DNA of 64,000 nt from Isurus oxyrinchus (taxonomy: Eukaryota). Positions 1-63,304 of the stretch are shown here, piece after piece. Positions within the stretch are counted from its first letter, which is position 1. Every line of letters begins with the position of its first letter. The DNA is taken from the NCBI GenBank assembly GCA_026770705.1, contig JANJGN010000385.1, forward strand, positions 62,001-126,000, written 5' to 3'. The notes beneath the pieces are model-generated. The model had not been told where the DNA came from. It was given only the letters and a program-made list of their open reading frames with translations, and made no database searches. A program made the translations under genes and the position numbers.

Positions 1-164
1 GAAAATTATTTTTAGGCTTATGGGAACAAGACTTAGTTCCTCAAATCCTTTCTTTTGCAATAACACACTACAAGAATTCTGTTTAAATAAATTCCAGTTA
101 AACTTTGCCATGAAAGGATATCTTCTCACACTCCGCTCTACCTCAGCACTAACCCTCCTACAGT

Positions 165-472
165 CTGGCACCCCCTCAATACTGACCCTCCGACTGTGCG
201 GAACTCACAGTACAGACAATCTGACAGTGCAGCACTCCCTCATTACTGACCCTCTGACAGTGCAGCACTCCCACATTACTGACCCTCTGACAGTGCAGCA
301 CTCCCACATTACTGACCCTCTGACAGTGCAGCACTCCCTCATTACTGACCCTCTGACAGTGCAGCAATCCCACATTACTGACCCTCTGACAGTGCAGCAC
401 TCCCACATTACTGACCCTCCCACAGTGCAGCACTCCCACAGTAGAGTCCCGCTGACAGTGCAGCACTCCCTC
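165..472 (+). repeat. 33-bp minisatellite (unit ~CAGTGCAGCACTCCCTCAGTACTGACCCTCTGA)
   Basis: Tandem copies are visible and give the spurious TVQHSHITDPL ORFs. The same family recurs at ~23.5-24.0, 26.9-27.0, 36.1-36.8, 38.7-38.9, 45.9-46.2, 48.3-48.6, 52.8-53.2 and 59.6-59.8 kb. Confidence 0.95.
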
Positions 473-697
473 CGTAATGATAACAGGGGTCGTTGAAATG
501 TATCATACGGCCCGAGACCTGTATTGGGGACTCTATCGCCTGAGTTTCAGCCTCTGTGGTGAGGGGGAGGAGTCTAATCCCACGGAGCCAATGGAGAAGC
601 TTCATGACTACAGCTGCCCAAATATGAGCTGACAGATCACACATGGTAAACGTTTTGCTGAGAGCACAAAACATCCTCGATCTTCTCACTGATTACC

Positions 698-838: not shown

Positions 839-1288
839 GTAAGTAACGGAACGATTGGAATTCACTTCCACCACCAACACCGTCCTTTGTTGATGTTGTG
901 ACTTTATAAAGACAGATTCCAATGATTGATGCCTTTGAAAGATTTCTACTGGTTATTGAGATCTGGGTGTGAGACTCAAGTCTGTTGTACAGAACATCTT
1001 TCTAGCTCAAGGGATGAGGGAAGTGCAGAGACATGAGCTTTGGGACGTCTTGAGGTGGTGAAAGGTGCTATAGAAATGCAAATCCTTTAATGTTTTTCTT
1101 TCTTAAAGTCTTGTAACTCTCTGCAGAGCACCTATCATCCCACAGAGAATCAAATTAGTCTGTAAAGACATTGTCCAAAAACAGTTCTGATCTCTTGAGA
1201 GCTGTCGGACAAGAGGTGAGGTCTCATTAACTCCTTTCTCTTTCAGAGTTTGAGAGTCAGAAGCTTATGAAGTATCTGGGAGTGGACA

Positions 1289-1328
1289 ATGATCGGGAAA
1301 TCCTACTTCCTCCTGTCACTTCTCGAAG
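1289..1328 (+). CDS. Siglec A leader exon MIGKSYFLLSLLE (exon begins 1247)
   Basis: Acceptor TTTCAG at 1241-1246, ATG at 1289 with A at -3, phase-1 donor GTAATA at 1329. Joins V1 to give ...LLSLLEVGLSQ/EW. Confidence 0.85.
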
Positions 1329-4300
1329 GTAATAACATCGTCAGCTCGGACAGGTTTATGGCTAATAGTCTTTGTAAAAGATCATTCTTATTGAGTGTGA
1401 TTGGGGACCGATTCAGCAGTGAGCCAGTGTACAAACTGACACCAAGTCCCATTCACCCATCACCCCTGTGCTCACTGATATACACTGACTCCCTGTCTGA
1501 CAGCAGAATTGGAGGAGAGCAGAGATCTCAGAGGGATTTAGGGTTGGAGGAGGTTACACAGATAGAGAGTGTAGAGGGGGGATGGTGGGGTAAGAACTCG
1601 ATGATGAGAATTTGAAATTTGAGTCATTGCTGGACTGGGAGTCAGTGTAGTTCAGCCAGTGACAGGAGAGCGATCCACTGACTAGAGAATCAGGAATCCC
1701 AACTGGGGGATGAGGTCTATCCTGATGCTGGGACTCGGATAACAATGCCCTGAAATTTTGTGTCTTTTGCTGATTTTAGTCAGAATTTCCCATGAAGACA
1801 ACACAGCAGCTCCTAGAATAGACAGGCTGTTCAGTGTCACACTTCCTGTCCATTCTCACCATGCTAGATACTTCAATAAGGGAGCAAGATAACTGAAAGA
1901 GAGAGGGAAGGTAAAGCTGTCTGTGTGTAAAGCTGTCAAATATTCTGAGTTATCATGATTGTTTCTGATCTGCTGCAGAGTTTAAAGTTCTCAGAATATT
2001 AGCACTTTGCAGCTCAGAGAGAGACCATTGACTCACTGCCTGAAAGGGCGGTGGAAGCAGATTCAACAGGAACTTTCAGAAGGGGAACTAGATAAATACT
2101 TGAAGGGGACATTTTGCAGGGCTGTGGAGGAGAGAGCAGAGGTTAGAGTGGGACTAATTGGACAGATCTTTCAAAGGCCCAGCACAGGCTCGATGGGCCA
2201 AATGGCATCCTTCATTTCCGGATCATTCTACAATCTGATAAATTAAGCCCCACATCAGTAACTCTTCAGGCTCCTGCTGCAGGGATGGATCTTTGAGAAG
2301 GACAGGGAACAAGAGGTTCCTGGTATCATTTTCATATTTCTTGACAATTATATAAGTGTATAGATCTGTTGAATATTTGAGTCTCTAAAGCGTAGAGGTA
2401 ATCTGCTGTTATATCGAGATCTTGTGGTGGCAAAATTGTCTGGAGGTTTCTTTAATTGCTCACATTGATCTGTGGGATTGTCATTCATCGATGTTGTCCC
2501 TGGTTTCAATTGACATTACACCCTTGATGCAACTGAGGAGGCTTTAAACTAATATGGCAGGGGATCGGATCCCGAGAGGAGGTTCAACAGAGAGAGATGC
2601 ACGGCCAAAATTAGAAGAGAGAGCAAATGAAACTGGAAGGCATAGAAATTATTGGCCATTTAAGGCTCAAGATAGCGTGGCAAAGTTGGATTGTATTAAT
2701 TTTAATGCAAGGAGTCTGACAGACTTGCATTCTCCTGCAGGTGTAATGTTGCAGCTCCCTTGAACCTGCCAATATTGTTGAATCTTTCTGCATATTTCAA
2801 TGTTATGTCATGAACTGAGCTGATGGGATAGTTTCTGAGACTGGGACAGACATAAATCCATTGGCTTTCGGCCGGACCGGACAATCATGGAAGTGGGTGG
2901 GGCCAGAAAATCCCACCCCTATGGGAACATTTTCAGTTAATTTGATGTGCCCAGAGAGATCAATAAAGACCACAATAGACAATTTATTGGCAAGCCACGT
3001 CAGGATATGTGTGAGAGGTGGAATATCGATCACCGCTCCTAGTCTTGTCGTGTACATCATCGCCATTTCCTGGTTTGTCAGTCACCACATGTATATGTTC
3101 CTGATGGAATAGCGGATGGTCATTCTTATTGCTTGAAGGTTCCCCGTTGTGCAGGGTTTGATTGGATCAGCGCACGGCTCTTTGTAGCTGCATCAGCCTT
3201 TGCTCTCGTGCCCTGCCGCTGTCAATGGCCCTTTCTGCCACAAGCCTTGCAGGATTGGTGGAAAGCTGGGCATTTCCTTGGTGCCTGCAGAAGGCCACAC
3301 TTTCCACACGTCTCACTAGGTTTGGATGTTCTAGTGAGTGTGTCAACAATTGATGTTGTACTGAGGACCTGTAAGCTTCGTTGACCTGCGAGGATCACTT
3401 CGTATTTATGTCCATCCTTGAGTAGCTCTTCAATGCTATAGGTTTTGGTCTTATCTAGCAGACCTTTCTGGAAGGCTTCCATGGGAGTGGATGTAATCAC
3501 CAACTCAACAACTCTGTCTGCAGGCTCTGTGTTTGAAATCACAGTGCGTACCCTTCTCTCTACATCGGCTGATGAAGTGGTCTATGGATTGTGTAGGCTG
3601 ATGAAATGACATAAACTCTAGTTGATGAATATGGAGTTTCACCTGATTCTGAACCTGTCTTCCAATGTCGTCCATATCTATTGGGGATCCTTTCACTCTT
3701 CTGCTGTTAATCCTGATGTGCTCAGCCTGTGTAGACCTTCATTCCCAATCGCGAGGTGAATTTTTATGGCTTGCTCGTCTGGTTCAGTCATACCTGAATC
3801 AGGAAACCAGAGCTCTGTATGCTGTTTAAACATTCTGAATTCAGATAGTCGGTCAGCTACATCCCAGTTCAAACTGGGGAATTTAGTGGACATTCTGACA
3901 ATATTCCTTTGACATTCCTTCTCCTACAGGATCTGGGATGAGTGTCGCTTTAGCCCCTTTCGTGCGCTTTTCCGAAGCTCCGCCCACGGAGACGGGTTGT
4001 GGCAGGAACACACCACGGAGTAATGGAGTCTTTGTTTTTTATTCAATTTGCTGTTCAGCAATCTCGAAGCCGCCCGTTATAATCACTAACTTCTCTGGGC
4101 TGATTTTTATAATGGTTTTTGTGTGTTTGACTCTCCCTCGCTCACTATCGATCCAGCCCACACCCTGGTCACTCGCCTTCCCTGACTGAGCTAACCCGCT
4201 GCTGGTCCTGGCGATACACACTGTCCCACTCACTGACCTACAGGCCGTATGCTGTAATCTCACCACGAGGGATCCGTCTGCTCCCCAGCTCTTTACTTGA

Positions 4301-7300
4301 GCTCTTTCCCGTCACTGTGTCTTCAAAGGTTTCCTGAGCAGTCAGTACACTGCGATTTCAACCCTCTCTGATGCTGCGTCTCTGTTGTGGTCTGACCAAA
4401 GCGTCGAGGGTCGTCTCATGTCATGTAGCTCGATCTCAGGCTGTTCACCACGTCATACCTGTACTGAATCTTGCTGCCAGAATGTTTGGCCACCACTGAT
4501 CACCATGTTGTGTTTTTATAATGATATAAAGGCACCAGCCACTGATACGGAATTGGGTAAATACATTGTGGGTTCAGTTATTTAGAACAGGGACATGAGA
4601 ACAGATATACAAGGATAGAAAGCTGGGAGACACCTGCAGCCAAACTGTGTGAGCTGTGTTCTGCTCACAGGCCAAAGAGAAACTTGGACTGGATGGTGTT
4701 ACCATCCCAGCTGATGTTACTACTGGGCAAGTCAGATCCCAGGGTGGAGCTCAGCTTGATAGGTCCTAACTTTTATTTTTTATTTAGGAATGTGGAGTGC
4801 GGCTACTGAACAGAGTCACAGGAGTCATCTGATGAACGTCTAACAAAAGAATAAAACATTTATTAAACTAGGAAAGACAAACTATATGACATTACTCCTT
4901 CACCGAGACCTATACCTTTACAGATACATAAGTAGAACACAAATTACGATAACTATCTTATATTCTCATGTTCACACTAAGTACACAGTCCGTGTAAACC
5001 AATAGACGACCTGTGGTCAGGGACACAACATTCTGAAGCAAGTGGCAGAGCCCACTTGAAACAAATTCTATGTCTCATCTGTCCCCAGACGCTTGTGACA
5101 CTGTGAGCCAACCAGTCTCACTGAAAAGCTTCTTTCATATGAGAGTTTCCAATCTCCACTCTCCAAGAACTCTCTTTGGAATCTCCTCCAACATGACACT
5201 TTCACTCAGACACCTTCCACAAGGGTCCACTTTCACTATTTCAAACTCTCCTTCCCATGTTCCTGTCCCCTGGATCGCCACGTGCATTCAGCCTTCCTTC
5301 CACGCCCTGTCTCTCCAATGCTCAGCCGTGTCAATGGAACACCATGGCTTCACATGGCCGTAGTAATGAGTCACCAACCTGTGGTGTCTCCTAGGATCTT
5401 CTGGCTTCTCACAAGCCTATTTTGCTTTAGGTCTGTGTCCTGCTGCTTCTTCCTTTAAGCTTGAAGCCTTCTTCTGCTCCTCATTCTTAACTTCACTTAA
5501 CAGGGCCTTTTCCAGATTTGACTAGAAGGTTTTCTTGGGCCCTTTCTCCTGTTCCACTCGATGGTTTTGGCTTCTTCTTTACTTTGGGACTGACTATCTG
5601 TCCCAATCCTTTGCTGCTTCTCCTGGCAACTCCTTTCAACAGAACTGAAAGTACTTTTCTGTTTTTCTCTGTCTCTGTGGGTCCTTCCCTCTGGATCACT
5701 GTTGCTAGGCAACAGCACAGTTTCTTACACCTTGTATTTGTTTTGACTTCCCTTCAACAGTCATAAAACCTCAATGAAATGCTGGCTTCTTTGTAACTCA
5801 AGTTCCCCCTTTTCTCAACACCCAAATACAGAAATACAAACTAAACTTGAACTTAAAGATAGACCTTTTGCCTAACACACACAAATACACATAGAACTTA
5901 CTTAAGCGAACACCAGTTCCTAAAAATCACATGACACACTTCCCCTCGAGTGATGTCATGCTGCTGTCCCTGAAAGGCATATTACAAAAGTGTTATCACT
6001 TGGCAGGTGATGTGTGCCAGGCAGACCAAGTCCATGAGAGAAAGGTGGTCACACTATCATAATGATTTTGCAATTTGTATTTATTATGAGATGTGTGCAC
6101 TTAATTCAGAAGCAATAACTCCACCAATACCTTCAGAGATTTAAAACAATAAATTAACATATTTGTCATCAAAATAAAGGATTTCAAGCACATACATAAC
6201 TACAAGACTGCTATCATAACTCCTAAAATTCCTAATTAACCTGACTCCCAGTTACAGTCCCTTTAAGGCAACAGACCAAAAATAGATGTTAGATTTAAAA
6301 CAAAATCAGCAAGTTAACCCAATGCCCCGGACAGTGGAATTCCAAATGCATTGTCCCCAACTTCAGTTCTGTTGGAGAGCAGACTTCTGCACAAACAGGG
6401 TCCTGAGGACCATGAACCAATGTAGAATGAACTTTTCCGCTTTTGTGTCCAGGATTCTCTTCCATCTGGTGTGATACCTTGTGGAGTTCATTGTGTGTCC
6501 TGTAGATGGTCCACACTGCAGCCACTGTGCCCCAGTGATGGAGGGGGTGGATATCGAGTCTAGTGGATCAACAAAACATCCAGAGTTAAATATTGATATT
6601 TCTCTCCCCAGTTGGATTGTCACAAGAGTGGAAAGGTGACACTCCACGAGAGGTGACAGCGCAGGAAGGTTCGTGTGTACAGATTCCATGTCATTACAGT
6701 TATCCATCAGATTTGGTAAAGAAACCACAGGTCGGAATCTGGAAAATGAGAAGATACATACAGAACAAATGGTCTAAATGGTCTATAGCCTTTCACTCCA
6801 AGGGTCACAGTCGCGAGTTATCACAGTTCCACCATCGGACCCGGCTGTCTGGAGACCTGAAAGATGGCGACTGTTCCCTGATTATAAACAACATCAGACG
6901 GGAAGATGCAGGATCTTATTTTTTCACGATAAAATTTGGCAATGGTCCGAGACATAACGTTTCCCCTGAAACCCAGCTTCACGTTTCTGGTAAGTGCTGT
7001 GTTATAATTACTCACCAATTCACATCCAACACTCAATGGGAAATAATAGTGTTTGATTTGCTTGTTTTTTGGCCGTGTTAACCAGCGTCACTATTTTTAA
7101 TGATTTGTCTATTTCTGCTCCCAGATCCATGAGCTTATTGTGTGTGATTGAATCCACATCATAGCTGTAACGTAAACCGAGCTGAGGGGTGATGACACCT
7201 CCCCCCTGAGTGAAGTGTCTCCTCCCCACTACACCTTCCACCCCTCACACTGTCCGTGTAAACCCCCGTCCCATCTCCAGCCTCTCTTTCCCCTCCAAAG

Positions 7301-10300
7301 TCCTTGAACGTGTTTCCATCTCCCGAATCCGGTTCCATCTTTCCCGGAACTCCATGTTTGAATCCCTCCAATCAGGTTCCCACCCCAGCCACTGTGCTGA
7401 AACAGCTCTTATCAAGGTCACAAATGGCATCCTGTGTGACTGTGACAAAGGTCAACTTTCCCTCCTCGTCCTTCTCGATCTGTCTGCAGCCTTTGACACG
7501 CTCGACCACACCATCCTCCTCCAACCCCTCTCCACTGTCGTCCAGCTGGGTGGGACTGCTCTCCCCTGGCTCCATTCTTATCCATCTCATCGTAGCCAGA
7601 GAATCACTTGCAATGGCTTTGCAGCATCATCTGAACAGTATTAGTTTTCACCTGTCCACTGAGGATCCCCAGCTCTACCTCACCACCACCTCTCTTGACT
7701 CCTCCACTGCTGCTAAATTATCAGGCTGCTTATCCGACATCCAGTACTGGATGGGCAGAAATTCCCTCCAATTAAATATTGGAAAGACTGAAGCCATTGT
7801 CTTCATTCCCCGATCCAAACTCTGTTCCCTCGCTACCAACTCCATTCCTCTCCCTGGCAGCTCTCTGAGATTGAAGCCAATCTGTTCACAGCTTTGTTGT
7901 CCCATTTGATCCTGAGATGAGCTTCCGGCCTCATATCTGCGCCCTCACTAACACCGTCTATTTCCACCTCCATAACGTCGTACGACTTCACCCTGTCTCA
8001 GCTCATCTGCTGCTGAAACCCTCATCCACGCCTTCATTACCTCCAGACTCGACTGTTCCAACACATGCTCTACACTCCATAAACTTGAGGCCATCCAAAA
8101 CTGCTGACCACGTCCTTACTCACACCAAGTCCCGTTCCCTTATCACCCGCTCTGCTCGATGACCGAGACTGGCTCCTGGTCAAGCAAAGTCTCAATGTCC
8201 AAATTTTTGAATATTTTTCCTCCCTATTACAGTAATCTCCTCCTTTATCTTCATCCACGGCAACATTCCCTATCGCAGGAGCCTCCTCCAGTCCCTACAA
8301 CCCTCTCTATCTCAGGAGCCTCCTCCAGTCCCTACAACCCTCCCTATCTCAGGAGCCTCCTCCAGTCCCTACAACCCTCCCTATCTCAGGAGACTCCTCC
8401 AGTCTCTACAACCCTCCTATCTCAGTACTCTCTTCCAATCCCGAAAACCATTCCTATCACTGCAAACTCCTCCGGACCCAACACCCCTCCCTATCTCTTT
8501 AACCTCCTCAAGCCCCGATAACCCTCGCGATATTTGTAGCCTCCTCCAGTCCTAACAACCTCCACTATCTCTGCAAACTCCTCCAGACCGAATACCTCTC
8601 CTATCTCTGTAAGCTGGTCCATCTCTTACAACCCTTCATATTTCTGTAACCTCCTCCAGCCCACTACAACCCTCCCTATCTCTGTAACCTCCTCCAGTCC
8701 CTAAGAGTTTCCTTCATCTCTGTAACTCCTCCAGCCATTATAACCCTCCCTATCTCTGTAGCCTCCCTCAGCCCCAGCCACACTCCATATCTATGTAACC
8801 TCGTCCTGCCCCTACAACCCTCCCTATCTCTGTAACCCCATCCTGCCCCAAAAACTCCCCCATCTCTGTAAACTCCTCCAGTCCCTGCAACCTTCCCTAC
8901 CTCTGGAACCTCCACCAGCCTTTCCAACCCTCCCTACCTCTGCAATCCGTCCAGCCCCTACAACTCTTCCTATCCCTGTAAACTCCTCCTGCCCCTAAAA
9001 CCCTCTCTGCCCTTGCAGCCTCCTCCAGTCCCTACACGTTCCCCATCTCCATAAACTCCTCAAATCCCTATAGCCCTCCCTATCTCTGCAACCTCCTCCA
9101 GGTCCTACCACCCTCCCTATCTGCGTAATGTCCTCCAGTATCTACAGCCCTCCCTATCTCTGTTACCTCCTCCAGCCCCCACAAACCTCCCTATCAGTGT
9201 AACCTCCTCCAGCCCCAGATGGAAGGTGGGTCGAGCGGGTCAGTCACTTGCATGTTTATTCTGCAGCTTTAATATTTTAAGAAGGTAAGAATGTAGGAAC
9301 ATAAGAAATAGGGACAGGAGCAGGCCATTCGGCCCCTCGAGCCTGCTCTCACTGATCTGGTTGTGGCCTTAACTCCATTTTCCTGCCTGTCCCCCAAACC
9401 CTTGACTCCCTTGTCGATCAAAAACCTGCCTCACTCAGCCTTGAGTCTATTCAATGGCCCAGACTCCACTGCTCTCTGGGGAAGAGAATTCCACAGGCTA
9501 GCGCCCCTCTGAGAGAGGAAATTCCTCCTCATCTCAGTCTTAGATGGGAGAGCCCTCATTCCGAAACTGTGCTCCCTGGTTCTAGATTCCCCCACGAGGG
9601 GGAAACATCCTCCCAGCATCCACCCTGTCAAGCCCCCTCGGAATCGGATATGTTTCAATAAGGTCACCCCTCATTCTTCTAAACTCCAATGGATACAGGC
9701 CCAACCTGCTCAACATTTCCTCACAGGACAAACCCTTTAATCCCAGGAATCAGCCCAGTGAACCTCCTCTGAACTGCCTCCAATGCAACTCTATCCCTCC
9801 CTAAGTAAGGAGACCAGAACTGTACACACTGCTCCTGATACAATCTCACCAACGCCCTGTGCAGCTGCTGCAAGACTTCCCTCCTTTTATACCCCATCCC
9901 TTTGCAATAAAGGCCAACATTCCACTTGCCTTCCTCATTCCGTGGTGTTCCTGAATGCTGACTTTCTGTGATTCATGTACAAGGACACCCAGATCCCTCT
10001 GTACTGCATTCTGCAGCCTGTCTCCATTTAAATAATATCCTGTTTTTCTATTCTTCCTGCCAAAATAATTTGTTGCCATTCTCCTCAGTATTGACCATCC
10101 CCCCAATTCAGCCTCATCTGTAAATTTTGAGTCTAGTGGATCCACAAACCATCCAGAGTTAAATATTGAGATTTCTCTCCCCAGATAAACCCTCACAAGA
10201 GTGGAAAGGTGACAGTCCACGAGAGGTGACAGCACAGGAAGGTTCGTGTGTACAGATTCCATGTCATTACAGTTATCCATTGTGTCCGGAAAACCAACCG

Positions 10301-13300
10301 CGAGGTGGAGTCTGGTTTAATAATGAGAAACAGATTCCCTGGGCTCCCATTGCCTTTCACTCCAAGGATCACAGTCACGAGTTACCACGGTTCCACCATC
10401 GGACCCGGCTGTCTGGAGACCTGAAAGATGGCGACTGTTCCCTGATTATAAACAACATCAGACGGGAAGATGCAGGAACTTATATTTTCAGAATAGAATT
10501 TGACAATGGTCCGGGCCATAACTATTACCCTGTAACCCAGCTTCACGTTTCTGGTAAGTGCTGTGTTATAATTACTCAACAATTCACATTCAACACTCAA
10601 TGGGAAATAACACAAACTGTGACGTTTACATATTAACACAAAACACAGCTAATTATAACACACTGTCTGATTCTCGATAACCTGGTGATAGCTTCCAGTT
10701 CAGTCCTAAAACAACCTCTAATACTCACTTTAATATCAGTGGTTAAATGTATTGACTGTGTCCATCAATGTTATCAGGTTATCCACTTACATCAATCTCC
10801 CTAATCCTGTTTAAAATTCTTACATATCAACAAAAGAAAGATTTGCATTTCTATAGCGCCTTTCACCACCTTTTGACGTCGCAAATGGATTCACAACCAT
10901 TGAAATAATTCTTGAAATGTAGCCCTTGTTGTAATATAGGAAACACAGCAGCCAATTTGTGCACAGGAAGCTCCCAGAAACAGCAATGTGATCAATAACC
11001 TGATCGTCTGCTTTAAATGCCGGTTCAGTGATTGGTTCAAATGGATTCTCTCCTGCTGGGAACTGGATAGAATTTAAATCTGGCAGATTTCGGAGAAAGT
11101 AACAAGCCAGTGTGTCAGGAACTGTGAGCTGATCCCCCACCCTCACCCGGGATTGTCAATTCAATTGTCTCAAAGTGGAAGTGAATTCATCTGAGTGACT
11201 GAAACTCCACTAAGTCTGAAAATAGGAAAGTCTCTCCTGATCGTTGTAATCTCTCAGTTCTGATATCATCCTTGTAAAAGTGCTTTTTCTTGTGGGACTG
11301 TGATTTCTATTTGAACTGATGCTTCACGTTATATTTCTCTAAAAGGATCCATTCTCTGTCTGTTAGATTTCACAGATAAACCCATGATATTCCCTGCTGA
11401 AATTATTGCAGGGAAGCGTGTGGATGTAAGCTGCACCTTCAACACAACGTGCAATGGAACAGCAGCACCTGTCTTAACCTGGGACACTCCCACTGACGTA
11501 CCTGGATCAGTCTCAAACACTGTAACTCAGCATGGTGTCACTCTGACCTATACTTCTGTTCTGACCCTGATCTCATCACTCAAACACCACGGACACACTC
11601 TAAGCTGCAGAGTGAGATATCCATCTGTTTCATCGGAGCGGACCCTCGTATTAACTGTACAAGGTAAGTACTGAAACCCTTGATTCTATATTAGCTGTAA
11701 TAGGTTACAATGTGCAGAGCAAGATCCCACAAACATCACTGGGTTGAAGACAAAACAGGTCCTTTTTTATTAGTGATATTGACCAGGGAGAGCTCTTCCT
11801 GTATTGAGCCTTGGGATTGTTTATGCCTACCTGATAGGGCAGAGGGGGCCAAGGTTGAACTTAAAAGACAATATAGGATAATATAAATATTGTCTTCATT
11901 GATGTCAAAGATTTTGGGGGTGATGTAGTATAAAAGTTTAATATTAACAATGTAAATAGATAGTATTTATCATCAGTTACTCAAGGTTACATGAGAATAG
12001 AACACGGAGAGAGATAGTTCTATAGATACCTAGGTACATAGAAACTAGGAGCACGATTAGGACATTCAGCCCTTCAAGCCTTCTCCGCCATTCAATATGA
12101 TCAAGGCTGACCCTCTATCTCAAAGCCTTATTCCCGCTTTCTCTCCGTACCCTTTGATGCCCCTAATATCAAAATATTTATCAGTTTCTTTCTTGAATAC
12201 ACTCAGTGACCCGGCCTCCACAGCCTCTGTGATGGAGAATTCCACAGATTGACCACCCTCTGAGTGAAGAAATGTTTCCCTATCTCAGTCCAAAATGGCC
12301 TGCCCTGTATCCTGAGATTGTCGCCCTTGGTTTTAGACTCCCCAACCAGGGGATGCATCCTCCCTCCATCCAGTCTGTCTATCTCTGTTAGAATTTCTTA
12401 CGTTTATTCAGGTCTCCTCTCATTCTTCTAAACTCTAGTGAATACAGACCCAGTCGTAGCAATTCTCCTCATACGACAGTCCTGCCGCCCCTGGTATCAG
12501 CCTAGAGAACCTTCTCTGCACTCTCTCGAAGGCAAGTCTATCCTTTTTTAGGGAGGGAGACCAAAACGGCACGTAGTACCCCATGTGCAGTCTCACCAAG
12601 ACCTTGTATAACTGCAGTGAGACATCCCTACTCCTGAACACAAATCCTCTTGCAATGAAGGCCAACATACCATTTGCCTTCCGAATTACTTGCTGCACCT
12701 GCCTGTTTACTTTCATTGGCTAGTGCACAAGGACACCCAGATCCCTTTATACATCCACATTTCCCATTATATCACCATTTAAATAATACTCTGCCTTTCT
12801 GTTTTTCACACCAAAGCCTACAATGTCACATTCAACCACATCATCTGCCATGTGTTTGCCCACACACACAACTTGTCTAAATCGCCTTGAAGCCTCTTTG
12901 CATCCTCCTCACAGCTCACACCCTTACCCAGCGTTGTGTCATCAGAAAACCTGGAAATATTGCACTTGGCTCCTTCACCCAAGTCATTTAAATATATCGT
13001 GAATAGTTAGGTCCCAAGCACGGATCGCTGTGGTACACCACTAGTCACCGCCTGCCACTCAGATAAAGACTAATTTATTCTGACCCTCTGTTTCCTGTCT
13101 GTCGACCAATTCTCAATCCATGCCAGTAAATAACCCGCAATCCCATGGGCTTTAATGTTGCGCACTAGCCTCATGTAGGACCTTATCAAAAGCCTTCTTG
13201 AAATCTAAAAACACCACATCCACTGGTTATCCCTTATCTATTCCACAAGTTACATCCTCAAAATCTCCAGTAGATTAGTTAAGCATGATTTTCCTTTCAT

Positions 13301-47600: not shown

Positions 47601-49136
47601 GTAATGTGGGCTGGGACATTTTGCAATGTCAGAGGCGCTGTGTAAATGCAAGTTGTGAGTGTTATGTGGAAGGGAGACCCCAGGCGGCAGTCAGTGCCAG
47701 AGACTGGAGTCATTGTGTGCAGACCGTATCTAATCTCTCCGAATGCACAATCGGTTTGACTGTCAGCCAAAGCATTTTTGATATTTGATCCTTCTACCTG
47801 TTTATAACCAGGCCTACATCAAACACCGAGAGGCTGGTTAATCAACAGACACCTTAGAGGATCGAGTGAAAGACAAAGAGGACTTGCATTTCTCTATAAA
47901 AACAAAGAAAACTGCAGATGCTGGAAAGCCAAAACAAAAACAGAATTACCTGAAAAAACTCAGCAGGTCTGGCAGCATCGGCGGAGAAGAAAAGAGTTGA
48001 CGTTTCGAGTCCTCAGAAGGGTCATGAGGACTCGAAACGTCAACTCTTGCATTTCTCTAGCGCCTTCCAACACTTCAGGACGTCCCAAACTGTTTCGCAG
48101 ACAATCAAGTGCTTTTTTTCTTTCATGTGAGGTCACTGATGTACTGTGGGAAAAGAATCAGCCATTGGCGCACAGTAAGATCCCACAGACAGCAGCATGA
48201 TAATGACCAGCGCGCTCCCAGTACTTGCACTGCAAGTGTCAGTTCAGGGTGTCTGCTCGATTCTCTGCAACTCTCAGCTCTGAGTTAAAAGGACCACCAG
48301 GCATAATTGAGAAATTACCGAGCTGTCGGAGGGTCAGTACCAGCGGGGGGGCAGGAGAGTCGGAGGGTCAGTACTGAGGGGGTGCTGCATTGTCAGACAG
48401 TCAGTCTTGGAGTGCTGCATTGTCAGAGGGTCAGTACCGGCGGGGGACTGCACAGTCGGAGGGTCAGTACTGAGGGGTGCTGCATTGTCAGACGGTCAGT
48501 ACTGAGGGAGTGCTGCACAGTCGGAGGGTCAGTACTGAGGGGGTGCTGCACTGTTGAATGCGCTGTCTTTCAGATGAGATGTTAAACTGAGACAACATCT
48601 GCCCTCTCAGATGGATGTAGAGGATTCCATGGCCACAATTTAAATGAAGTGCGTCAGGAGTTGGGGGTATGTGTGGAGGGGGTGGTGGGGGGTGGATGGG
48701 ATGCAGTTATGTCTGCTTTCCTGGGGCAAACATTTATCCCTCAACTGACATTGGTAAAAAACTGAAAATCGGGGCCATTATCACATTTCTGTTTGTGGGA
48801 TCTTGCTGTGCGTGAATTGCCTGCTGCGTTTCCTACATTACAGCGGTGAGCTCACTTCAGAAAAAGTCCTTCCTTCAGCTGTGGAACACTTTGGGCCATC
48901 CTGAGGAGGGGAAAGGCGCTATAGAAATGCGCCATCCTCCTTCCAATGACGCGCCTGATTGAAATGATGCCTTCTTTCTTTCCGGAATGTTCTCACCTAT
49001 TGTCCTCCTGCTTTTCCAGGGCTCCTTGCTGCAGCGCCAGAAGAGAATGGACAGACAGCAGCTCTGCATATTCTGCTGTAGCTGCTGTAATTGGAGAGAA
49101 CCAAATGAGACTTGTGGTCTCTGCTGTAGATATTAG
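44670..49136 (+). CDS. HAMP: Hepcidin-like prepropeptide, 88 aa, exons 44670-44762, 46568-46624, 49020-49136
   Basis: MGSSQMKWRLVLFTLTLLLSLQLSHFFSLSR | VDTALGSSTIEKSVDSPDT | GSLLQRQKR-MDRQQLCIFCCSCCNWREPNETCGLCCRY*. Has a signal peptide, furin site RQKR, the hepcidin 8-Cys pattern C-x2-CC-x-CC-xn-C-x2-CC, and two phase-0 GT-AG introns. AATAAA at 49778-49783. Confidence 0.93.
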
Positions 49137-53934: not shown

Positions 53935-54530
53935 TGGAGGGATTGAGTACAAACACAGGGAGGTTATGCTGAACATTTATAAAGCTCTGGTTAGGTCACA
54001 ACTAGAGTATTGTGTCCAGTTCTGGTCTCCTCACTTTGGGAAGGAAGTGAGGGTCCTTGAGAGGGTGGGGAGGAGATTGAGCAGAATGGGTCCAGGGATG
54101 AGGGATTTTAGCTACAAGGTTGGGTTGGAGAAGCTGGGGTTGTTCTCCTTGGAGCAAAGGAGATTGAGGGGGGATCTGATCGAGGTGTACAAGATGATGA
54201 TGGGTTTAGATAAGGCAGACAAAGAGAAGCTGTTGCCATTAGCTGATGGTACAAGGACTGGGGGACACAGATTGAAGGTTTTGGGCAGAGGGGGGATTTG
54301 AGGAGGAACTTTTTTACACAGCGAGTGGTAATGAGCTGGAACTCGCTGCCTACGAGGATGGTGGAAGCGGAGACGATGAACGATTTCAAAAGGAAATTGG
54401 ATGGACACTTGAGGGGAAATAAACTTGAAGGGATACGGGGATAGAGCGGGGGAATGGGACTGACTGGATTGCTCTACAGAGAGACAGCATGGAGTCGATG
54501 GGCCGAATGCCGTCCTTCTGTTCCATGATG
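53935..54530 (+). mobile_element. CR1-type LINE 3' end
   Basis: GIEYKHREVMLNIYKALVRSQLEYCVQFWSPH..LFSLEQRRLRGDLIEVYK. Confidence 0.9.
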
Positions 54531-54551
54531 AGACTGTTGCTGTACAAAGCT

Positions 54552-54691
54552 TCAAACAGTCTGTCGACTTCCTTTCACTGTTTGTCTCTCCCAGACACAG
54601 ACTCCAGCGATAGTGATAACCACAGCCACAAGGAATATCACAGCTCGTATTCCCAGGATCAGGATCACGTGCAGAATCTCTCCTCCACTGT
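54552..54691 (-). CDS. Gene B TM + short tail exon (H)SGGEILHVILILGIRAVIFLVAVVITIAGVCVWERQTVKGSRQTV*
   Basis: Pyrimidine-rich TCTCTAG acceptor; phase 1 matches the upstream Ig donor; CGA (Arg) at 54647-54645 inside the hydrophobic stretch; TGA at 54554-54552. Not in the ORF track frame. Confidence 0.82.
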
Positions 54692-57600
54692 CTAGAGAAC
54701 ACACAGAAAGAAATCATCACTGACTCTCCGCTTTCAATCTCTCACTCTGGCTGAACAATCAAGCTTCATATCACTGCAACATTTGCTGTAATATTGACCC
54801 ATCCACTGGGATTCAATGTGGAATGAATGTTTTCATTGTAAACACTCTAAGAGTGGACAATCGGAACTTTCCCCTTAGCGTGGAACATTGGTGAGAATGG
54901 ATCATTGTGCTGTTGGACTCCCTGTCCAATGTTTCTCTCCATCGCTGTGTACAGGATTGTGCTGTAGAAAATTCTGGAAACGTTTAGTGCAGGGTAGAAA
55001 TCCATCTCGGACGCGTGTGCGAATCGGGCAAGATCGAGATGGACTCCCCCATGGACTTACACCCCCCGCTTAATAAACAGGTCCAATCTTTATCCAGAGA
55101 GAGGGGAGAATGTGGAACTCGCTCCCACAGGGAGTGGTCGAGGTGAACAGTATCGATGTATTTAAGGGGCAGGAGGGTCGGTAACCAGAGGGACACAGAT
55201 TGACGAACCGGAGGGGGAGATGAGGAGAATTTGTTTTGACAGAGTGAGTTGTTGTGATCTGGAAGGTTCTGCCTGAAAGGGCGGTGGAAGCAGATTCAAT
55301 AGGAACTTTCAAAAGGGAAATTGGATAAACACTTGAAGGAGGAAGATGGGGGCAAAGTGGAGTGGTGGTTAGTGGATCTGATGGGATAGAACATTGAAAG
55401 ACCTGGCACAGGCTCAATGGGCTGAATGGCCTCCTCCTGTGCTGTATCATTCTCCGCTTCCATGATCTCTCCCCCAGTCAGTAACCACTCCAGATCCCTC
55501 TTGAAGGTGACAGAGAGACAGCAACCACCACACCCACTGACAGCACATTCCCGAGGATCCCTACTCTCTGGGAAAAGATGAACTCCCCAACATCCAGCCT
55601 ATTCCTGCTTCCCAGAGAGTGTAAACCCTTCAGGGAGGCACTGAGGAAGTTTTCAATAAAATGAATTATCAAATCTATCATTTGAGAAATAATTTAATTC
55701 TGATGAACTCACAGCTTGTGTAGCAAACTGGGAAGTGGAGTTGCTGGGAAAGCTGGGAAACACAAGGATGAAGGGCTACAATGCCACCACTGGTGGGAGG
55801 CTGTAACTACAGCGTGACGTTTACATAGGCAGTCATCATTATAAACAGGGGCATTGCACATAATGGGAATTATGTGCACGGAAATAGTGAGAACATTATG
55901 TAAGCTTTTCACCAGCAGGAATTCTCTTCCTAAACCTCTCCAACTCTCTCTTACTCTCAGATACACAAAGAAAATCACACAGAATCAGATAAGGAAGAAT
56001 TAGGTTGGTGATTCGTCAAAGGGTTAGGTTTCAGGAAGCTTCTTAAAAGGAGAGAGAGAGTTGGAGACGCAGAGAGTATCTGTGAGAGCCTCTATGCATC
56101 TGAGTGTCTGTAATAGTAATTTCCATATTCTTCCATAAATATGAATGGGAACACAAATCCCAGAATTCAGGCCAACTCTCCAGTGCAGTACTGAGGGAGG
56201 TCAGGTAACCCATGAGGGAGTGAGTGTTAGTGTTTGTGTGTGAGTGTGTCTTTGTGTGTGGTCATATATGTGTGTCTGCACGTGTCTATTTAGGTGTGTA
56301 TGTTCGATGGTGTTTGTGTAGTGTTCAAATCTGAGAGAGATGTTGAAGTCTGTGTAACTCACGTTCCACACTGATGGTTATGAACCCATCCACTGCTCCA
56401 TGTTCATTCTCTGCCACACACTGATAGTCTCCAGTGTCCCTGGATGTAACATGAGGAATCACCAACCACAGCTCATTGTTGGAACTTGTTCTGTTCATTT
56501 GGACATTCAGATGTCATGGCAGGAATCAAGAAGCCCGTTCACAGGATTATCAACAGAAAGTGAACAACAATTTATACTTAATGGGAAGAGAGTGCTGATT
56601 GGTTGGCAAGTGGACTCTGATAGGTGGAGGTGTTGCCATGGAGAATGGTGTGTGCGAGATGTAAAGTTTAGACAGCTTGTCTCTTCATTCAGCAATAATC
56701 AAATAAAGATCAATTAAATTCTATCGACTTTGAAGCACTTAGAGAGGCCTTAGAATGTGGACACTGAGAACGGGCTGCACTGTCAGAGGGTCTGCGCTGA
56801 GGGAGTGCTGATGTAGAATGAAAGGTGTATGTAATTACCTTGCACTGTTAGTACGAGGGTCCGCTCCGATGAAACAGATGGATATCTCACTCGGCAGCTG
56901 AGAGTGTGTCCGTGGTGTTTGAGTGATGGGATCAGGGTCAGAACAGAAGTATAGGTCAGAGTGACACCATGCTGAGTTACAGTGTTTGAGACTGATCCAG
57001 GTACGTCAGTGGGAGTGTCCCAGGTTAAGACAGGTGCTGCTGTTCCATTGCACGTTGTGTTGAAGGTGCAGCTTACATCCACACGCTTTCCTGCAATAAT
57101 TTCAGCAGGGAATATCATGGGTTTATCTGTGAAATCTAACAGACAGAGAATGGATCCTTTTAGACAAATATAACGTGAAGCATCAGTTCAAATAGAAATC
57201 ACAGTCCCACAAGAGAAAGCACTTTTACAAGGATGATATCAGAACTGAGAGGTTACAATGATCAGGAAAGATTTTCTTGCTCTTTGGCAGTAGTGTTTCT
57301 GTCTCTCAGCTTAATACACGTTCACTCCGAGACATGTGAATTGAGAATACTGGATGAGAGAAGAGGCTCAGTCCAGAGATTGGAGTTAAAAGCAGAATAC
57401 TGCGGATGCTGGAAATCTGAAACAAAAACAAAAATTGCTGGAAAGACTCAGCAGGTCTGACAGTATCAGTGGAGAGGAAGACAGGGTTAACGTTTCAAGT
57501 CTGTATGACTCTTCATCAGACCAGAGGTTTGAGTTCACTGGCTTCTCATTTCCTCAGTGATCTGGGTGATTTATCACCTTGTGGTTTGTTGGATCTTGCT

Positions 57601-59995
57601 GTGCACAAACTGACTGCTGTGTTTTACATCTGTGACTACAATTCAGGAATAATTTCATTGGCTGTGAAGGGATTTGGATCCTCCTGAGGTGGTAAATTGC
57701 GCTGCAGAAATGCACATCTTTCTTTTATCGATACGTGAGACTTTTAAACAGGACAGGAGAGATTGATGGGAGTGGATAACCTGATAATACAGTTAATGCT
57801 TTTCATCATTGATATTAAAGTGAGTATTAGAGGTTGCTTTAGGACTGAACTGGAAGCTATCACCAGGTTATTGAGAATCAGATAGCAAGTTATAATAAGC
57901 TGTGTTTTGTGTTAATATGTAAACGTCACAGTTTGTGTTATTTCCCATTGAGTGTTGAATGTGAATTGTTGAGTAATTATAACACAGCACTTACCAGAAA
58001 CGTGAAGCTGGGTTACAGGATAGTAGCTTTAACTATTCCTGCTGTCAAATTCTATTCTGAAAAAAATAAGGTCCTGCATCTTTCCGTCTGATGTTGTTTA
58101 TAATCAGGGAACAGTCGCCATTTTTCAGGTCTCCAGACAGCCGGGTACGATGGCGGAATCTTTGATCCCTGTGACTGTGACCCTCGGAGTGAAAGGCTAT
58201 AGACCATTTAGGCTGTAGGGTTCCCATCTATTCCTGTCAACCAGATTCCGACACGTGATCTCCCTACGAAATGTGATGATTAACTGTCATGACATGGAAT
58301 CTGTACACAGGAACCTTCCTGCGCTGCCACCTCTCGTGGAGTGTCGCCTTTCCACTCTTGTGACAGTCCAAGTGGGGAGAGAAATATCAATATTTAACTC
58401 TGGAAGGTTTGTAGATCCACTAGACTCGATATCCACCCCCTCCATCACTGGGGCACAGTGGCTGCAGTGTGGACCATCTACAGGACACACATGGAACTCC
58501 CCAAGGTTTCACAATGGATGGAAGAGAATCCTGGACACAGGAGTGGACAAGTTCATTCTACATTGGCTCATGGTCCTCAGGACCCTGTTTAGTGAAGCCA
58601 GTCTTCCACCCAACACAGTGTCTACAAGATACACAGAGAAACTGTGTAAACATCTCATCTCTCTAAACTGACTGGCTTGGCTTCGGTTTAACTTTCAGTA
58701 TTTTTAAATTTCCATATTGTGGTTGCTATGGTGAAACTGTGCAGGAAGAGTGAGGGCTGGACTCTCTGTCTATTCTCACTGCAGCTGTGATGTGGCCGTG
58801 GTGATTGTCAGTAAAATGAAACCCTCTGATCTCCTCCATCCCCGAGGTTTAGGGAGTGAATTCCAGAGCTCAGGCCCCAGGCAGCTGAAGGCACGGCCGC
58901 CAGTATTGGATTGATGGGAATCGGGGGATGGTCAAGAGGCCGGAATTGCAGTAACACAGAGATCTGGGAAGTTGTTTGGTTGAGTTGCAGGAGGTTTCAG
59001 AGATTAAGAGATAAGAATGATCTTTTACAAAGACTGTTAAACATAATTCTGTCTGAGCTGATGATGATATTACCTTGGGAAAGTGACAAGAGGAAGTAGA
59101 TTTCCCGATCATCGTCCACTCCCAGATATTCCATCCACTTCTCACTCTCAAGCTGTGAAAGAGAAAGGAGTTAATGAGACGTCACCTCTTGTCCGAATGC
59201 TCTCGAGAGATCAGAACTGCTTTTAGACAATGTCTTCACAGACTAATTTGATTCTCTGTGGGATGATAGGTGCTCTGCAGAGAGTTACAAGGCTTTAAGA
59301 AAGAAGAACATTTAAGGATTTGCATTTCTATAGCACCTTTCACCACCTCAAGACGCTCATGTTTTGAGATCTTGGTGAACTGTTAACCGTTTGTGTCCTG
59401 ACCCTGTGGTGATATTTCTGCTCAGAGGTGGACAGTCATTGACCAGGAGTTTCTCCTGTGGGTCAGTGGGTTTCACAGCCAAATTCAGGGGCTCTGAACA
59501 TTGTGGGATTCAAGACCCCATTCAGGGGACGTCTGCCCCACAGAGTAGACTGAAACTCCCCAGTGTCAGTACTGAGCAAGTGCTGCACTGTCGGATGGTC
59601 ATTACTGAGCAAGTGTTGTACTATTGTAAGGTCAGTACTGAGGGGGATCTCCACTGTTGGAGGGTCAGTACTGAGGGAGTGCTGCACTGTCAGAGGGACA
59701 TTTATCAGGGAGTGCTGCACTGTTGGAGGGTCAGTACTGAGGGAGTACTGCACTGTCAGAGGGACATTAATCAGGGAGTGCTGCACTGTTAGAGGATCAG
59801 TACTGAGGGAGTGCCGCACTGTTGAAGGGTCAGTATTAAGGTGCTGATTTAGAAGACAGGACAATGTGTTAGGAGCCCTCAGAACTTCCCCCGTGATTTC
59901 CAATCGATCCGTTACTTACCCAGGACCTGTCTGACTGCTTGCCTGGGGAGGAACTGCCCACACGCTCTGCTTGGGCTGAATGGGCCTCCTCCTGT
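54552..59995 (-). pseudogene. Siglec gene B: inverted paralog, activating type (leader-V-C2-C2-TM with Arg-short tail), disabled
   Basis: 5'UTR exon ~59995-59920; leader 59152-59074 (1 nt short); V 58371-57995 (acceptor AG>AC at 58372, TAA at 58282-58280 and 58031-58029, frameshifts); intact C2 57135-56839; 5'-truncated C2 ~56516-56363; intact TM/tail exon 54691-54552. Confidence 0.88.
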
Positions 59996-63209: not shown

Positions 63210-63304
63210 CTGTAATAGAAACAGAAATGATCAGAGTGACAATCAGAGTGATCAGTGTTTAGTATTATTGATCCAAATCGAAAATTCCACCCACAATACA
63301 TACA

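What the first reader, a model, noticed from the sequence alone, without database searches (positions are those of the whole stretch)
1289..59995. Paired inhibitory/activating Siglec system in inverted orientation, flanking the hepcidin gene
Seen: gene A (+) has an uncharged TM and ITIM/ITSM tails. Gene B (-) shares the leader, V and C2 exons but ends in an unrelated exon with an intramembrane Arg (ILGIRAVIFLV) and a ~12-aa Tyr-free tail. Known: this is the design of mammalian paired Siglecs (Siglec-5/14, Siglec-11/16), whose activating member recruits an ITAM adaptor (DAP12) through a charged TM residue; an N-terminal TM Arg is also typical of FcR-gamma-coupled receptors. Inference: a shark lineage evolved, or retained, a paired Siglec system.
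Basis: partly seen in the sequence, partly recalled or inferred. Interest (0 to 1): 0.87.

Follow-up and report, generated by a model that had tools for sequence, protein, structure and literature searches.

The report
Shark Siglec pair; activating twin broken
Beside a shark's hepcidin gene lie an intact inhibitory Siglec-like receptor gene and an inverted, decayed copy ending in a genuine "activating" membrane exon with a buried arginine; that design is common in sharks, but this copy is most likely a pseudogene.

Summary
The sequence facts are mostly right. Gene A (+, 1289-27393) reads as an intact inhibitory Siglec-like gene. It has two Siglec-type V domains, C2/Ig domains, an uncharged TM and ITIM/ITSM tails. 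A hepcidin exon lies at 48972-49136. The exon at 54552-54691 (-) is exactly as described: 140 nt, an Arg inside the TM, and a 12-aa Tyr-free tail.

That exon is real. It ends at least 15 RefSeq-predicted shark proteins with an invariant ILGIRA core. These include intact V-C2-ArgTM Siglec-like proteins of catshark and white shark. RNA-like contigs join it by a canonical GT..AG intron to the C2 exon at the exact coordinates. A DNA run lacks that joint.

Gene B itself is most likely a pseudogene. Its V exon has two in-frame TAA codons and has lost its acceptor AG. Its leader has a 1-nt deletion, and only half of its third Ig exon survives. So the paired inhibitory/activating design holds for the shark family, but here the activating partner is dead. 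The real activating twins of gene A lie elsewhere. The adaptor is unknown.

The scan had already found the same Arg-TM exon on other pieces of this genome. RefSeq names such proteins automatically. I found no paper that describes them.

The parts
1289..1328 (+). Gene A leader exon (MIGKSYFLLSLLE, phase 1). An out-of-frame upstream ATG lies at 1267.
   Evidence: The same leader is found in S. canicula and C. carcharias RefSeq proteins P0012, P0013, P0088 and P0097.
6612..6989 (+). Gene A V1: a Siglec-type V-set exon in which the F-strand Arg is replaced by Thr (FFTIKF).
   Evidence: AG/GT boundaries, 378 nt in phase. Pfam V-set 50.8 bits and Ig_CD22 38.7 bits. Best solved-structure matches are CD33 and Siglec-5, E about 1e-11.
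10185..10553 (+). Gene A V2: a Siglec-type V-set exon that keeps the sialic-acid Arg (IFRIEF).
   Evidence: Siglec-5/7/CD33/8 match at E 4e-14 to 2e-13, with the Arg aligned to the Siglec-5 YFFRVE motif. 78% identical to the activating S. canicula protein P0013.
11367..11663 (+). Gene A C2-set exon (Siglec domain 2).
   Evidence: Pfam C2-set_2. Aligns to domain 2 of MAG and CD33. In phase, with AG/GT boundaries.
16190..16471 (+). Gene A Ig3a exon. Its donor lies 4 nt before the gap at 16476.
17388..17667 (+). Gene A Ig3b: a near-identical tandem copy of Ig3a with a 2-nt deletion (280 nt, out of frame). Probably a pseudoexon or an assembly flaw.
19537..19812 (+). Gene A Ig4 exon.
20769..21062 (+). 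Gene A Ig5 exon.
21983..22079 (+). Gene A TM exon, uncharged (WTVGLFTTGIMLSVFLAGIFIFICV).
   Evidence: No similarity to B's TM exon.
22804..24420 (+). Gene A cytoplasmic module 1: exon 22804-22885 plus terminal exon 24172-24420 (FLYANP and TEYAQI).
25600..27393 (+). Gene A cytoplasmic module 2, a duplicate: exon 25600-25681 plus terminal exon 27145-27393 (ITIM LLYTNI, ITSM TEYAQI).
   Evidence: 88% identical to the tail of the inhibitory C. carcharias protein P0075.
48972..49136 (+). Last exon of a hepcidin-like gene (RQKR cleavage site and an 8-Cys peptide).
   Evidence: Pfam Hepcidin PF06446, 29.7 bits against a cut-off of 27.
54552..54691 (-). Gene B terminal exon: the Arg-containing TM cassette (ILGIRA) with a 12-aa Tyr-free tail and a TGA stop.
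   Evidence: phmmer E 7e-14 to 1e-7 to the C-termini of shark proteins. Spliced joint 54691 to 56839 in runs X1, X2 and X5, absent from DNA run X16.
56364..56513 (-). Gene B relic of the third Ig exon. Only the 3' half remains (146/150 nt identical to gene A 17517-17666), and the spliced form skips it.
56839..57135 (-). Gene B C2 exon. It is intact and differs from gene A's by 1 aa. It lies inside a roughly 400-nt tract that is 98% identical to gene A.
   Evidence: Both of its splice boundaries are used in RNA-like contigs.
57995..58373 (-). Gene B V exon, a pseudoexon. The acceptor is AC (58373-58372) and there are TAA codons at 58282-58280 and 58031-58029. Extra bases at 58217 and 58060 are not seen in the reads.
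59074..59134 (-). Gene B leader exon, with a 1-nt deletion after the ATG at 59112. The deletion puts the upstream ATG at 59134 in frame with the hydrophobic core.

Best explanation
The window is a piece of a shark Siglec-like receptor cluster at the hepcidin locus. The nearest proteins are from the white shark.

Gene A is an inhibitory-type receptor. It has a signal peptide and two Siglec V domains; only the second keeps the sialic-acid Arg. These are followed by a C2 domain, three or four Ig domains, an uncharged TM, and a tail with ITIM and ITSM motifs. That tail would recruit SH2 phosphatases (inferred).

Gene B is an inverted partial duplicate of the 5' part of gene A. It ends in a terminal exon of unrelated origin. 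That exon is a conserved shark cassette encoding a TM helix with a buried Arg and almost no tail. Intact relatives with this cassette would need an acidic-TM ITAM adaptor of the FcR-gamma, DAP12 or CD3-zeta type to reach the surface and to signal (inferred; the adaptor is not identifiable from sequence).

At this locus gene B has decayed. There are two nonsense codons and a lost acceptor in the V exon, a leader indel, and a truncated third Ig exon. A recent gene-conversion tract keeps its C2 exon nearly identical to gene A's. Gene B is therefore a pseudogene, possibly still transcribed. The working activating twins of gene A are other genes of the cluster.
For: Shown:
- Gene A's exon structure and motifs.
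- Siglec identity of V1, V2 and C2.
- Hepcidin between the two genes.
- The cassette ends 15 shark proteins with an invariant ILGIRA core, in Siglec-like, CD22-like and SLAM-like families.
- Intact leader-V(Arg)-C2-cassette proteins exist in S. canicula (P0012, P0013) and in C. carcharias (P0020, P0017).
- Inhibitory relatives with the same TM and LLYTNI/TEYAQI tail exist (P0075, P0021, P0026).
- The canonical joints C2 donor to cassette acceptor (56839/54691) and V donor to C2 acceptor (57995/57135) appear in RNA-like runs and not in the DNA run.
- Gene B's lesions.
- The second TAA is in the frame fixed by the exon's donor, so upstream indels do not affect it.
- Both TAA codons sit where relatives have Tyr (P0088).
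- The conversion tract is 392/400 identical, against 66-86% in the flanks and the V exon.
Against: - Two of the frameshifts in B's V exon (58217, 58060) are absent from the reads (58217 in every contig covering it, 58060 in all of X1's contigs and one of the DNA run's). With them removed the exon is 375 nt and in one frame. The assembly is therefore not fully reliable here, and the other lesions were not checked against reads.
- The leader deletion brings an upstream ATG into frame.
- An AG 13 nt downstream of the lost acceptor would keep the frame (seen directly in the sequence).
- The C2 and cassette exons are intact, and spliced contigs map here.
- The spliced contigs were accepted at 93% likeness and have only 23-28 nt on the shorter side of the joint. 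They may come from paralogs that are 91-96% identical.
- Adaptor coupling and sialic-acid binding are untested. In a teleost receptor (IpLITR 2.6b) the TM charge was not even needed for adaptor binding (PMC4810170).
Confidence: 0.75

Rival explanations
1. Gene B is a working activating Siglec-like gene with the architecture leader-V-C2-ArgTM. On this reading its apparent lesions are assembly errors or alleles of the sequenced individual.
For: - Two of the frameshifts are contradicted by reads from three runs, including DNA.
- After removing them the V exon is one 375-nt frame that keeps the Siglec Cys pattern and the Arg.
- The C2 and TM exons are intact.
- Canonical V-to-C2 and C2-to-TM joints are seen.
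- An upstream ATG restores the leader frame.
- The relic Ig exon is skipped, giving exactly the architecture of the intact proteins P0012, P0013 and P0020.
Against: - Two independent Tyr-to-TAA substitutions remain, as does the AG-to-AC acceptor change. These are base substitutions, not homopolymer slips.
- Among the differences listed, none falls at those places. However, 128 rows were not shown.
- The rescued leader would have a net acidic N-region.
- No AATAAA or ATTAAA lies within 950 nt downstream of the stop.
Confidence: 0.15
2. The Arg-TM exon does not belong to gene B. It would be a chance ORF, a piece of a transposon, or the last exon of an unrelated gene.
For: - It has no counterpart in gene A.
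- It lies 2.1 kb from the nearest intact Ig exon, with repeats in between and a retroelement ORF just downstream at 53789-54298.
- The same cassette also ends CD22-like and SLAM-like proteins.
Against: - The joint 56839/54691 links it to the C2 donor with GT..AG and the right phase.
- The junction peptide (VQ-DSGGE) is the one found in P0001, P0012, P0017 and P0020.
- E-values against the whole library are as low as 7e-14.
- No other Ig exon of another family lies on the minus strand nearby.
Confidence: 0.03
3. The tail-to-tail arrangement of A and B around hepcidin is a scaffolding artefact. On this reading A and B are not neighbours, or not inverted, in the real chromosome.
For: - Nine gaps of estimated length lie in the window, six of them between gene A and hepcidin.
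- Islands of 31 and 160 nt between gaps suggest short-read scaffolding.
Against: - Hepcidin and gene B are on one uninterrupted stretch (39461-64000).
- First-stage notes report further Siglec genes about 27 kb on either side (untested).
- A recent A/B conversion tract argues for physical proximity.
Confidence: 0.1

Closest known systems
Human paired Siglecs: Siglec-5/Siglec-14 and Siglec-11/Siglec-16
   Same: - Linked genes with similar N-terminal Ig domains kept alike by gene conversion.
- One member has ITIM plus ITIM-like/ITSM tyrosines. The other has a positively charged TM residue and a short tail (PMC13358205, PMC4042635).
- An inactive activating member also occurs in humans: the SIGLEC14 null and SIGLEC16P alleles (my own knowledge).
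   Different: - The shark TM exon has no detectable similarity to anything solved. It is a cassette shared with CD22-like and SLAM-like receptors.
- Here the conversion tract covers the C2 exon, not the ligand-binding V exon, which is only 80-86% identical.
- The locus is next to hepcidin, not in a CD33-related cluster.
- The adaptor is unknown.
- The activating copy here is dead.
RefSeq-predicted elasmobranch Siglec-like proteins, for example C. carcharias 'CD33-like' P0020 and 'Siglec-12 X2' P0017, S. canicula 'Siglec-13' P0012 and 'Siglec-14 X2' P0013, and the inhibitory P0075, P0097 and P0021
   Same: - The same leader, V, C2, Arg-TM cassette or uncharged TM, and LLYTNI/TEYAQI tails.
- Per-exon identity to the window is 78-98%.
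- 91 relatives of 150-478 aa were found in sharks, rays and skates.
   Different: - These are automatic gene models with names borrowed from mammals.
- None is identical to gene A or gene B.
- Gene B has no intact counterpart among them.
Teleost paired immune receptors (LITRs, NITRs) and the conserved fish Siglecs (Siglec-1, CD22, MAG, Siglec-15)
   Same: - Stimulatory forms have a charged TM and a short tail and couple to FcR-gamma-type adaptors. Inhibitory forms carry ITIMs (PMC4810170).
- Siglec-15 uses a TM Lys for DAP12/DAP10 (PMC7226832).
   Different: - LITR and NITR ectodomains are not Siglec V-sets.
- Teleost genomes are reported to lack CD33-related inhibitory Siglecs (PMC7226832). 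The shark family has many such genes.

Membership tests
Siglec (sialic-acid-binding Ig-like lectin) | N-terminal V-set Ig domain closest to Siglec V-sets | tested here: met
   Best solved-structure matches for V2 are Siglec-5, -7, CD33, -8, sialoadhesin and MAG (E 4e-14 to 7e-12). V1 gives the same set. Pfam Ig_CD22 scores above its cut-off.
Siglec (sialic-acid-binding Ig-like lectin) | Conserved F-strand Arg that binds the sialic-acid carboxylate | tested here: met
   Present in gene A V2 and aligned to the Arg of the Siglec-5 YFFRVE motif. Present in gene B's V exon in the read-corrected frame. Absent from the N-terminal V1, which has Thr there.
Siglec (sialic-acid-binding Ig-like lectin) | Cys pattern: C-x6-C on strand B, one Cys on strand E, and a third Cys in domain 2 for the inter-domain bond | tested here: met
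   SCVQIPC and DCSL in V1 and V2; three Cys in the C2 exon. Disulfide formation itself was not tested.
Siglec (sialic-acid-binding Ig-like lectin) | Binding of sialylated glycans | not testable with these tools
   Needs glycan arrays with V-domain Fc chimeras and an Arg-to-Ala control.
CD33-related Siglec subgroup | Phylogenetic grouping with CD33-related Siglecs rather than MAG, CD22, Siglec-1 or Siglec-15 | tested here: inconclusive
   Only bit scores are available: Siglec-5 56, CD33 54.5, sialoadhesin 52, MAG 49, Siglec-15 37, CD22 26. No tree was built. The position next to hepcidin points rather to the MAG/CD22 neighbourhood (PMC4453067 plus my own knowledge).
CD33-related Siglec subgroup | Membrane-proximal ITIM plus a distal ITIM-like/ITSM tyrosine | tested here: met
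   Tail 2 has LLYTNI, then TEYAQI 24 residues later. Tail 1 has only TEYAQI.
Paired inhibitory/activating receptors | Linked genes with highly similar ectodomains | tested here: inconclusive
   C2 exon 97.6% nt and 1 aa different. V exon only 80-86% nt. Linkage of A to B rests on scaffolding.
Paired inhibitory/activating receptors | One member with an ITIM tail, the other with a charged TM residue and a short tail without motifs | tested here: met
Paired inhibitory/activating receptors | Both members encode receptors | tested here: not met
   Gene B has two TAA codons and a lost acceptor in the V exon, a leader indel and a half Ig3 exon. The caveat is that the assembly was not checked by reads at the stops.
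Paired inhibitory/activating receptors | The activating member associates with an ITAM adaptor through the TM charge | not testable with these tools
Shark Arg-TM terminal cassette (ILGIRA exon) | Terminal phase-1 exon with an invariant ILGIRA core and a Tyr-free tail of at most 17 aa | tested here: met
   140 nt. 80-96% identical to the C-termini of P0001, P0002, P0017 and P0020. The core is invariant in 15 proteins.
Shark Arg-TM terminal cassette (ILGIRA exon) | Spliced directly behind an Ig exon | tested here: met
   Joint 54691/56839, GT..AG on the minus strand, in X1, X2 and X5 and not in DNA run X16. A paralog origin of the contigs is not excluded.

The most novel reading that the evidence does not exclude
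Elasmobranchs carry a large family of CD33/MAG-like Siglecs of their own, organised as inhibitory and activating twins. The family sits at the ancient hepcidin-MAG/CD22 locus. The activating forms are made by attaching one mobile Arg-TM terminal exon that is also used by CD22-like and SLAM-like receptors. Paired Siglec signalling would then be either as old as jawed vertebrates or invented independently outside mammals. This window would show one step of its birth-and-death turnover: a freshly converted but dead activating copy.
Probability: 0.5. Interest if true: 0.7.

Novelty: new variant of a known kind. Interest (0 to 1): 0.5.

Why it matters
Reviews treat paired inhibitory/activating Siglecs as a mammalian, largely primate, answer to pathogens that mimic sialic acids. 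They also state that fish lack CD33-related Siglecs (PMC13358205, PMC7226832).

A family of dozens of such genes in sharks and rays, with ITIM/ITSM members and Arg-TM members sharing 78-94% identical V domains, would move that arms-race logic to the base of jawed vertebrates. It would also give a natural system for asking how activating partners are made (exon cassette), kept alike (gene conversion) and lost (pseudogenes like gene B).

The value of this particular window is limited. Its activating copy is dead, and the cassette had already been noted elsewhere in this genome.

Tried and rejected
I therefore could not test whether the catshark or white-shark genes also flank hepcidin.
- The findings search by sequence was blank.
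- The TM exon matched no solved structure even at E 10.
- The spliced gene models were never joined. All searches were done exon by exon by reference, so no whole-protein search, fold or signal-peptide test of gene A or B was made.
- Assembly gaps were not filled or looked up.
- The single read-laying run covered gene B only, so gene A's splicing was not checked. That includes use of V1 plus V2, Ig3a versus Ig3b, and tail 1 versus tail 2.
- In that base differences and 228 joints were not shown. The two TAA codons, the acceptor and a leader-to-V joint therefore remain unverified.
- I first read the leader deletion as fatal. I withdrew that after finding that the upstream ATG comes into frame.
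- Paper searches for shark or elasmobranch Siglecs and for shark ITAM adaptors found nothing specific.

Full report
**What is in the window**

The window has nine assembly gaps and many satellite arrays and retroelement fragments.

A self-comparison shows that 1046-1391, 6381-7046, 10129-11000 and 11142-11695 on the plus strand match, inverted, 59355-59011, 58604-57938, 58427-57565 and 57358-56807. There are therefore two related genes in opposite orientation. A hepcidin-like last exon lies between them at 48972-49136, with an RQKR site and an eight-Cys peptide (Pfam Hepcidin 29.7 bits, cut-off 27).

**Gene A**

All exons have AG/GT boundaries and fit in phase:
- leader 1289-1328
- V1 6612-6989
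- V2 10185-10553
- C2 11367-11663
- Ig3a 16190-16471
- Ig4 19537-19812
- Ig5 20769-21062
- an uncharged TM exon 21983-22079
- a cytoplasmic exon 22804-22885 and terminal exon 24172-24420
- a duplicate of that module at 25600-25681 and 27145-27393

Tail 2 carries a canonical ITIM (LLYTNI) and an ITSM (TEYAQI). Tail 1 has only FLYANP and TEYAQI.

A second copy of Ig3 (17388-17667) has a 2-nt deletion and is out of frame.

V1 and V2 are Siglec V-sets. Their best solved relatives are Siglec-5, -7, CD33, -8, sialoadhesin and MAG (E 1e-14 to 1e-10). The essential Arg aligns in V2 and is replaced by Thr in V1. The C2 exon aligns to domain 2 of MAG and CD33.

**The Arg-TM exon**

The exon at 54691-54552 (-) is exactly as described. 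It has a pyrimidine tract and AG, starts in phase 1, has 45 codons and a TGA, has an Arg about one third into a 29-residue hydrophobic stretch, and has a 12-residue tail without Tyr. It is unrelated to gene A's TM exon.

A phmmer scan of 1.84 billion representative proteins found seven shark proteins that end in this exon (E 7e-14 to 4e-6; P0001-P0007). It also found a Mustelus SLAM-like protein that ends in a shorter form of it (P0009) and one model in which it lies internally (P0010).

The full-length-cassette proteins are RefSeq models from Scyliorhinus torazame, Chiloscyllium punctatum, Hemiscyllium ocellatum and Rhincodon typus, plus one GenBank hypothetical protein of S. torazame. The RefSeq names are CD33-like, Siglec-12, Siglec-13, sialoadhesin-like and CD22-like.

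Further searches added intact leader-V(Arg)-C2-cassette proteins of S. canicula (P0012, P0013). They also added white-shark proteins whose cassette is 91-96% identical to the window's (P0020, P0017, P0018).

The core ILGIRA is invariant in all 15 cassette-bearing proteins. This agrees with an earlier follow-up of this scan on another piece of the genome (s1-300793). That follow-up called it a cassette reused by three receptor families. I re-derived that result independently.

**RNA evidence**

I laid Logan contigs of three RNA-like runs (two organism labels, two studies) and one DNA run on 54350-59360.
- A joint from 54691 to 56839 (skipped part CT..AC on the plus strand, that is GT..AG on the minus strand) is present in X1, X2 and X5 and absent from the DNA run.
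- It links the donor of gene B's C2 exon to the acceptor of the cassette in the right phase. The junction peptide matches that of P0001, P0012, P0017 and P0020.
- A second joint, 57135 to 57995, links the V donor to the C2 acceptor in X2 and X5.
- The relic third Ig exon is skipped.

There are caveats. The runs are only guessed to be RNA. Contigs were accepted from 93% likeness. The shorter side of each joint is 23-28 nt. Paralogs 91-96% identical exist, so the transcripts may come from a paralog rather than from this locus.

**Gene B is broken**

- The leader has a 1-nt deletion after the ATG at 59112. However, this brings the upstream ATG at 59134 into frame with the hydrophobic core and keeps phase 1.
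- The V exon acceptor is AC instead of AG (58373-58372).
- The V exon has TAA at 58282-58280, in the conserved YSYP motif, and TAA at 58031-58029. Both sit where relatives have Tyr.
- The assembly also has two single extra bases at 58217 and 58060. At 58217 every contig that covers the place lacks the extra base, the DNA run's included. At 58060 all of X1's contigs lack it, but only one contig of the DNA run (252.9 of 670 depth). Without them the exon is 375 nt and one frame, still with both TAA codons.
- The second TAA is in the frame fixed by the donor, whatever happens upstream.
- Of the third Ig exon only the 3' 150 nt survive. The missing half borders a stretch that is very deep in the DNA run, which suggests a repeat.
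- No polyadenylation hexamer lies within 950 nt of the stop.

I conclude that gene B is a pseudogene, with about 80% confidence. The remaining doubt comes from the shown unreliability of the assembly at two indels.

**Gene conversion**

Across the C2 exon and 130 nt of the upstream intron, A and B are 392/400 identical. The flanks are 66-82% identical and the V exon 80-86%. The two C2 exons differ by one amino acid. This is the pattern of a recent conversion tract, as in mammalian paired Siglecs, but here it covers the C2 domain and not the ligand-binding domain.

**The family**

A search with P0013 found 91 relatives of 150-478 aa, all from sharks, rays and skates. A simple classification found 15 with the cassette and 29 with an uncharged TM and ITIM and/or ITSM. 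Among the latter, white-shark P0075 has a TM and tail that match gene A's.

Activating proteins share 78-94% identical V domains and 89-94% identical C2 domains with gene A. P0017 even has gene A's two-V arrangement.

The paired design is therefore real at family level, and gene A's working twins are other genes. First-stage notes place further Siglec genes about 27 kb on either side of this window (not tested).

**Mechanism**

Shown: the architecture, the motifs, the conservation and the splicing.

Inferred from established knowledge of paired receptors (PMC13358205, PMC4810170): ITIM/ITSM tails recruit SH2 phosphatases, and an Arg-TM receptor needs an acidic-TM ITAM adaptor.

Which adaptor is used cannot be read from the sequence. 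In catfish IpLITR 2.6b a TM Lys pairs with FcR-gamma-type chains, not with DAP12, and neutralising that Lys did not abolish binding (PMC4810170).

**Known or new**

In mammals HAMP, USF2, MAG and the FFAR genes share one locus (PMC4453067). That CD22 lies beside MAG is my own knowledge. A Siglec cluster beside shark hepcidin fits that old neighbourhood.

The literature I could search says fish have only Siglec-1, CD22, MAG and Siglec-15 and lack CD33-related Siglecs (PMC7226832). I found no paper on elasmobranch Siglec expansions or on paired shark Siglecs. The whale shark genome paper only lists Siglecs among the Ig-domain gene families it found enriched.

The proteins do exist in RefSeq under automatic names, and this scan has noted the cassette several times on other DNA of this genome.

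**Limits**

- The spliced models were never joined. All searches were exon by exon.
- Gaps were not filled.
- Only gene B was laid with reads.

Noticed in passing
window 16190-16471 and 17388-17667: There are two tandem copies of the third Ig exon, about 99% identical after the first 30 nt. The second has a 2-nt deletion near its 5' end (280 nt, out of frame). It is either a pseudoexon that must be skipped or an assembly flaw next to the gap at 16476-16603.
   Followed up: partly
window 1267-1328 and 59134-59074: The leader exon carries an upstream ATG in another frame (MKYLGVDNDREI...). RefSeq models P0075, P0041, P0004 and P0005 start there, while P0012, P0013, P0088 and P0097 start at the MIGKSYFLL ATG. 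So either there is a uORF or some starts are mis-annotated. In gene B a 1-nt deletion fuses the two frames.
   Followed up: partly
window 11238-11637 versus 57264-56865: A roughly 400-nt tract covering the C2 exon and 130 nt of intron is 98% identical between genes A and B. The flanks are 66-86% identical. This indicates a recent gene conversion between inverted copies 45 kb apart.
   Followed up: yes
window 22188-24420 and 24988-27393: The whole cytoplasmic module (a small exon plus the terminal exon) is duplicated in tandem at about 94% identity. Only the distal copy has a canonical ITIM. Which copy is used is unknown (also noted as s1-869612).
   Followed up: partly
window 58217 and 58060: Public-run contigs have one base fewer than the assembly at these two places: every covering contig at 58217 (the DNA run's included), and at 58060 all of X1's contigs but only one of the DNA run's. 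Base-level accuracy of the assembly is therefore imperfect here. Contigs otherwise differ from the window by 0-4%.
   Followed up: partly
window 57374-57541, 56534-56869 and 55358-55525: These stretches have extreme depth in the DNA run, up to 1.7 million against a few thousand elsewhere. They are high-copy repeats inside gene B's introns. One of them borders the truncated Ig3 exon.
   Followed up: no
window 123-480, 23458-24053, 36049-36795, 38662-38985, 45877-46154, 52834-53221 and 59555-59841: Arrays of one 33-nt satellite occur in both orientations. Two other satellite families are also scattered through the cluster: one at 8261-9217, 20137-20477, 41701-42311 and 44955-45828, and another at 40870-41320, 59960-60190 and 61044-61770. 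A 24-nt array lies at 63268-64000. These could serve as substrates for rearrangement.
   Followed up: no
window 49032-49136: The hepcidin-like mature peptide has a long loop between the Cys pairs that contains an N-x-T sequon (NET). This is also noted as s1-869622.
   Followed up: no
P0004, P0005, P0007 and P0009 (other sharks): The same Arg-TM cassette ends multi-Ig 'CD22-like' proteins and two-Ig 'SLAM family 9-like' proteins. The exon has therefore been shuffled among at least three receptor families.
   Followed up: partly
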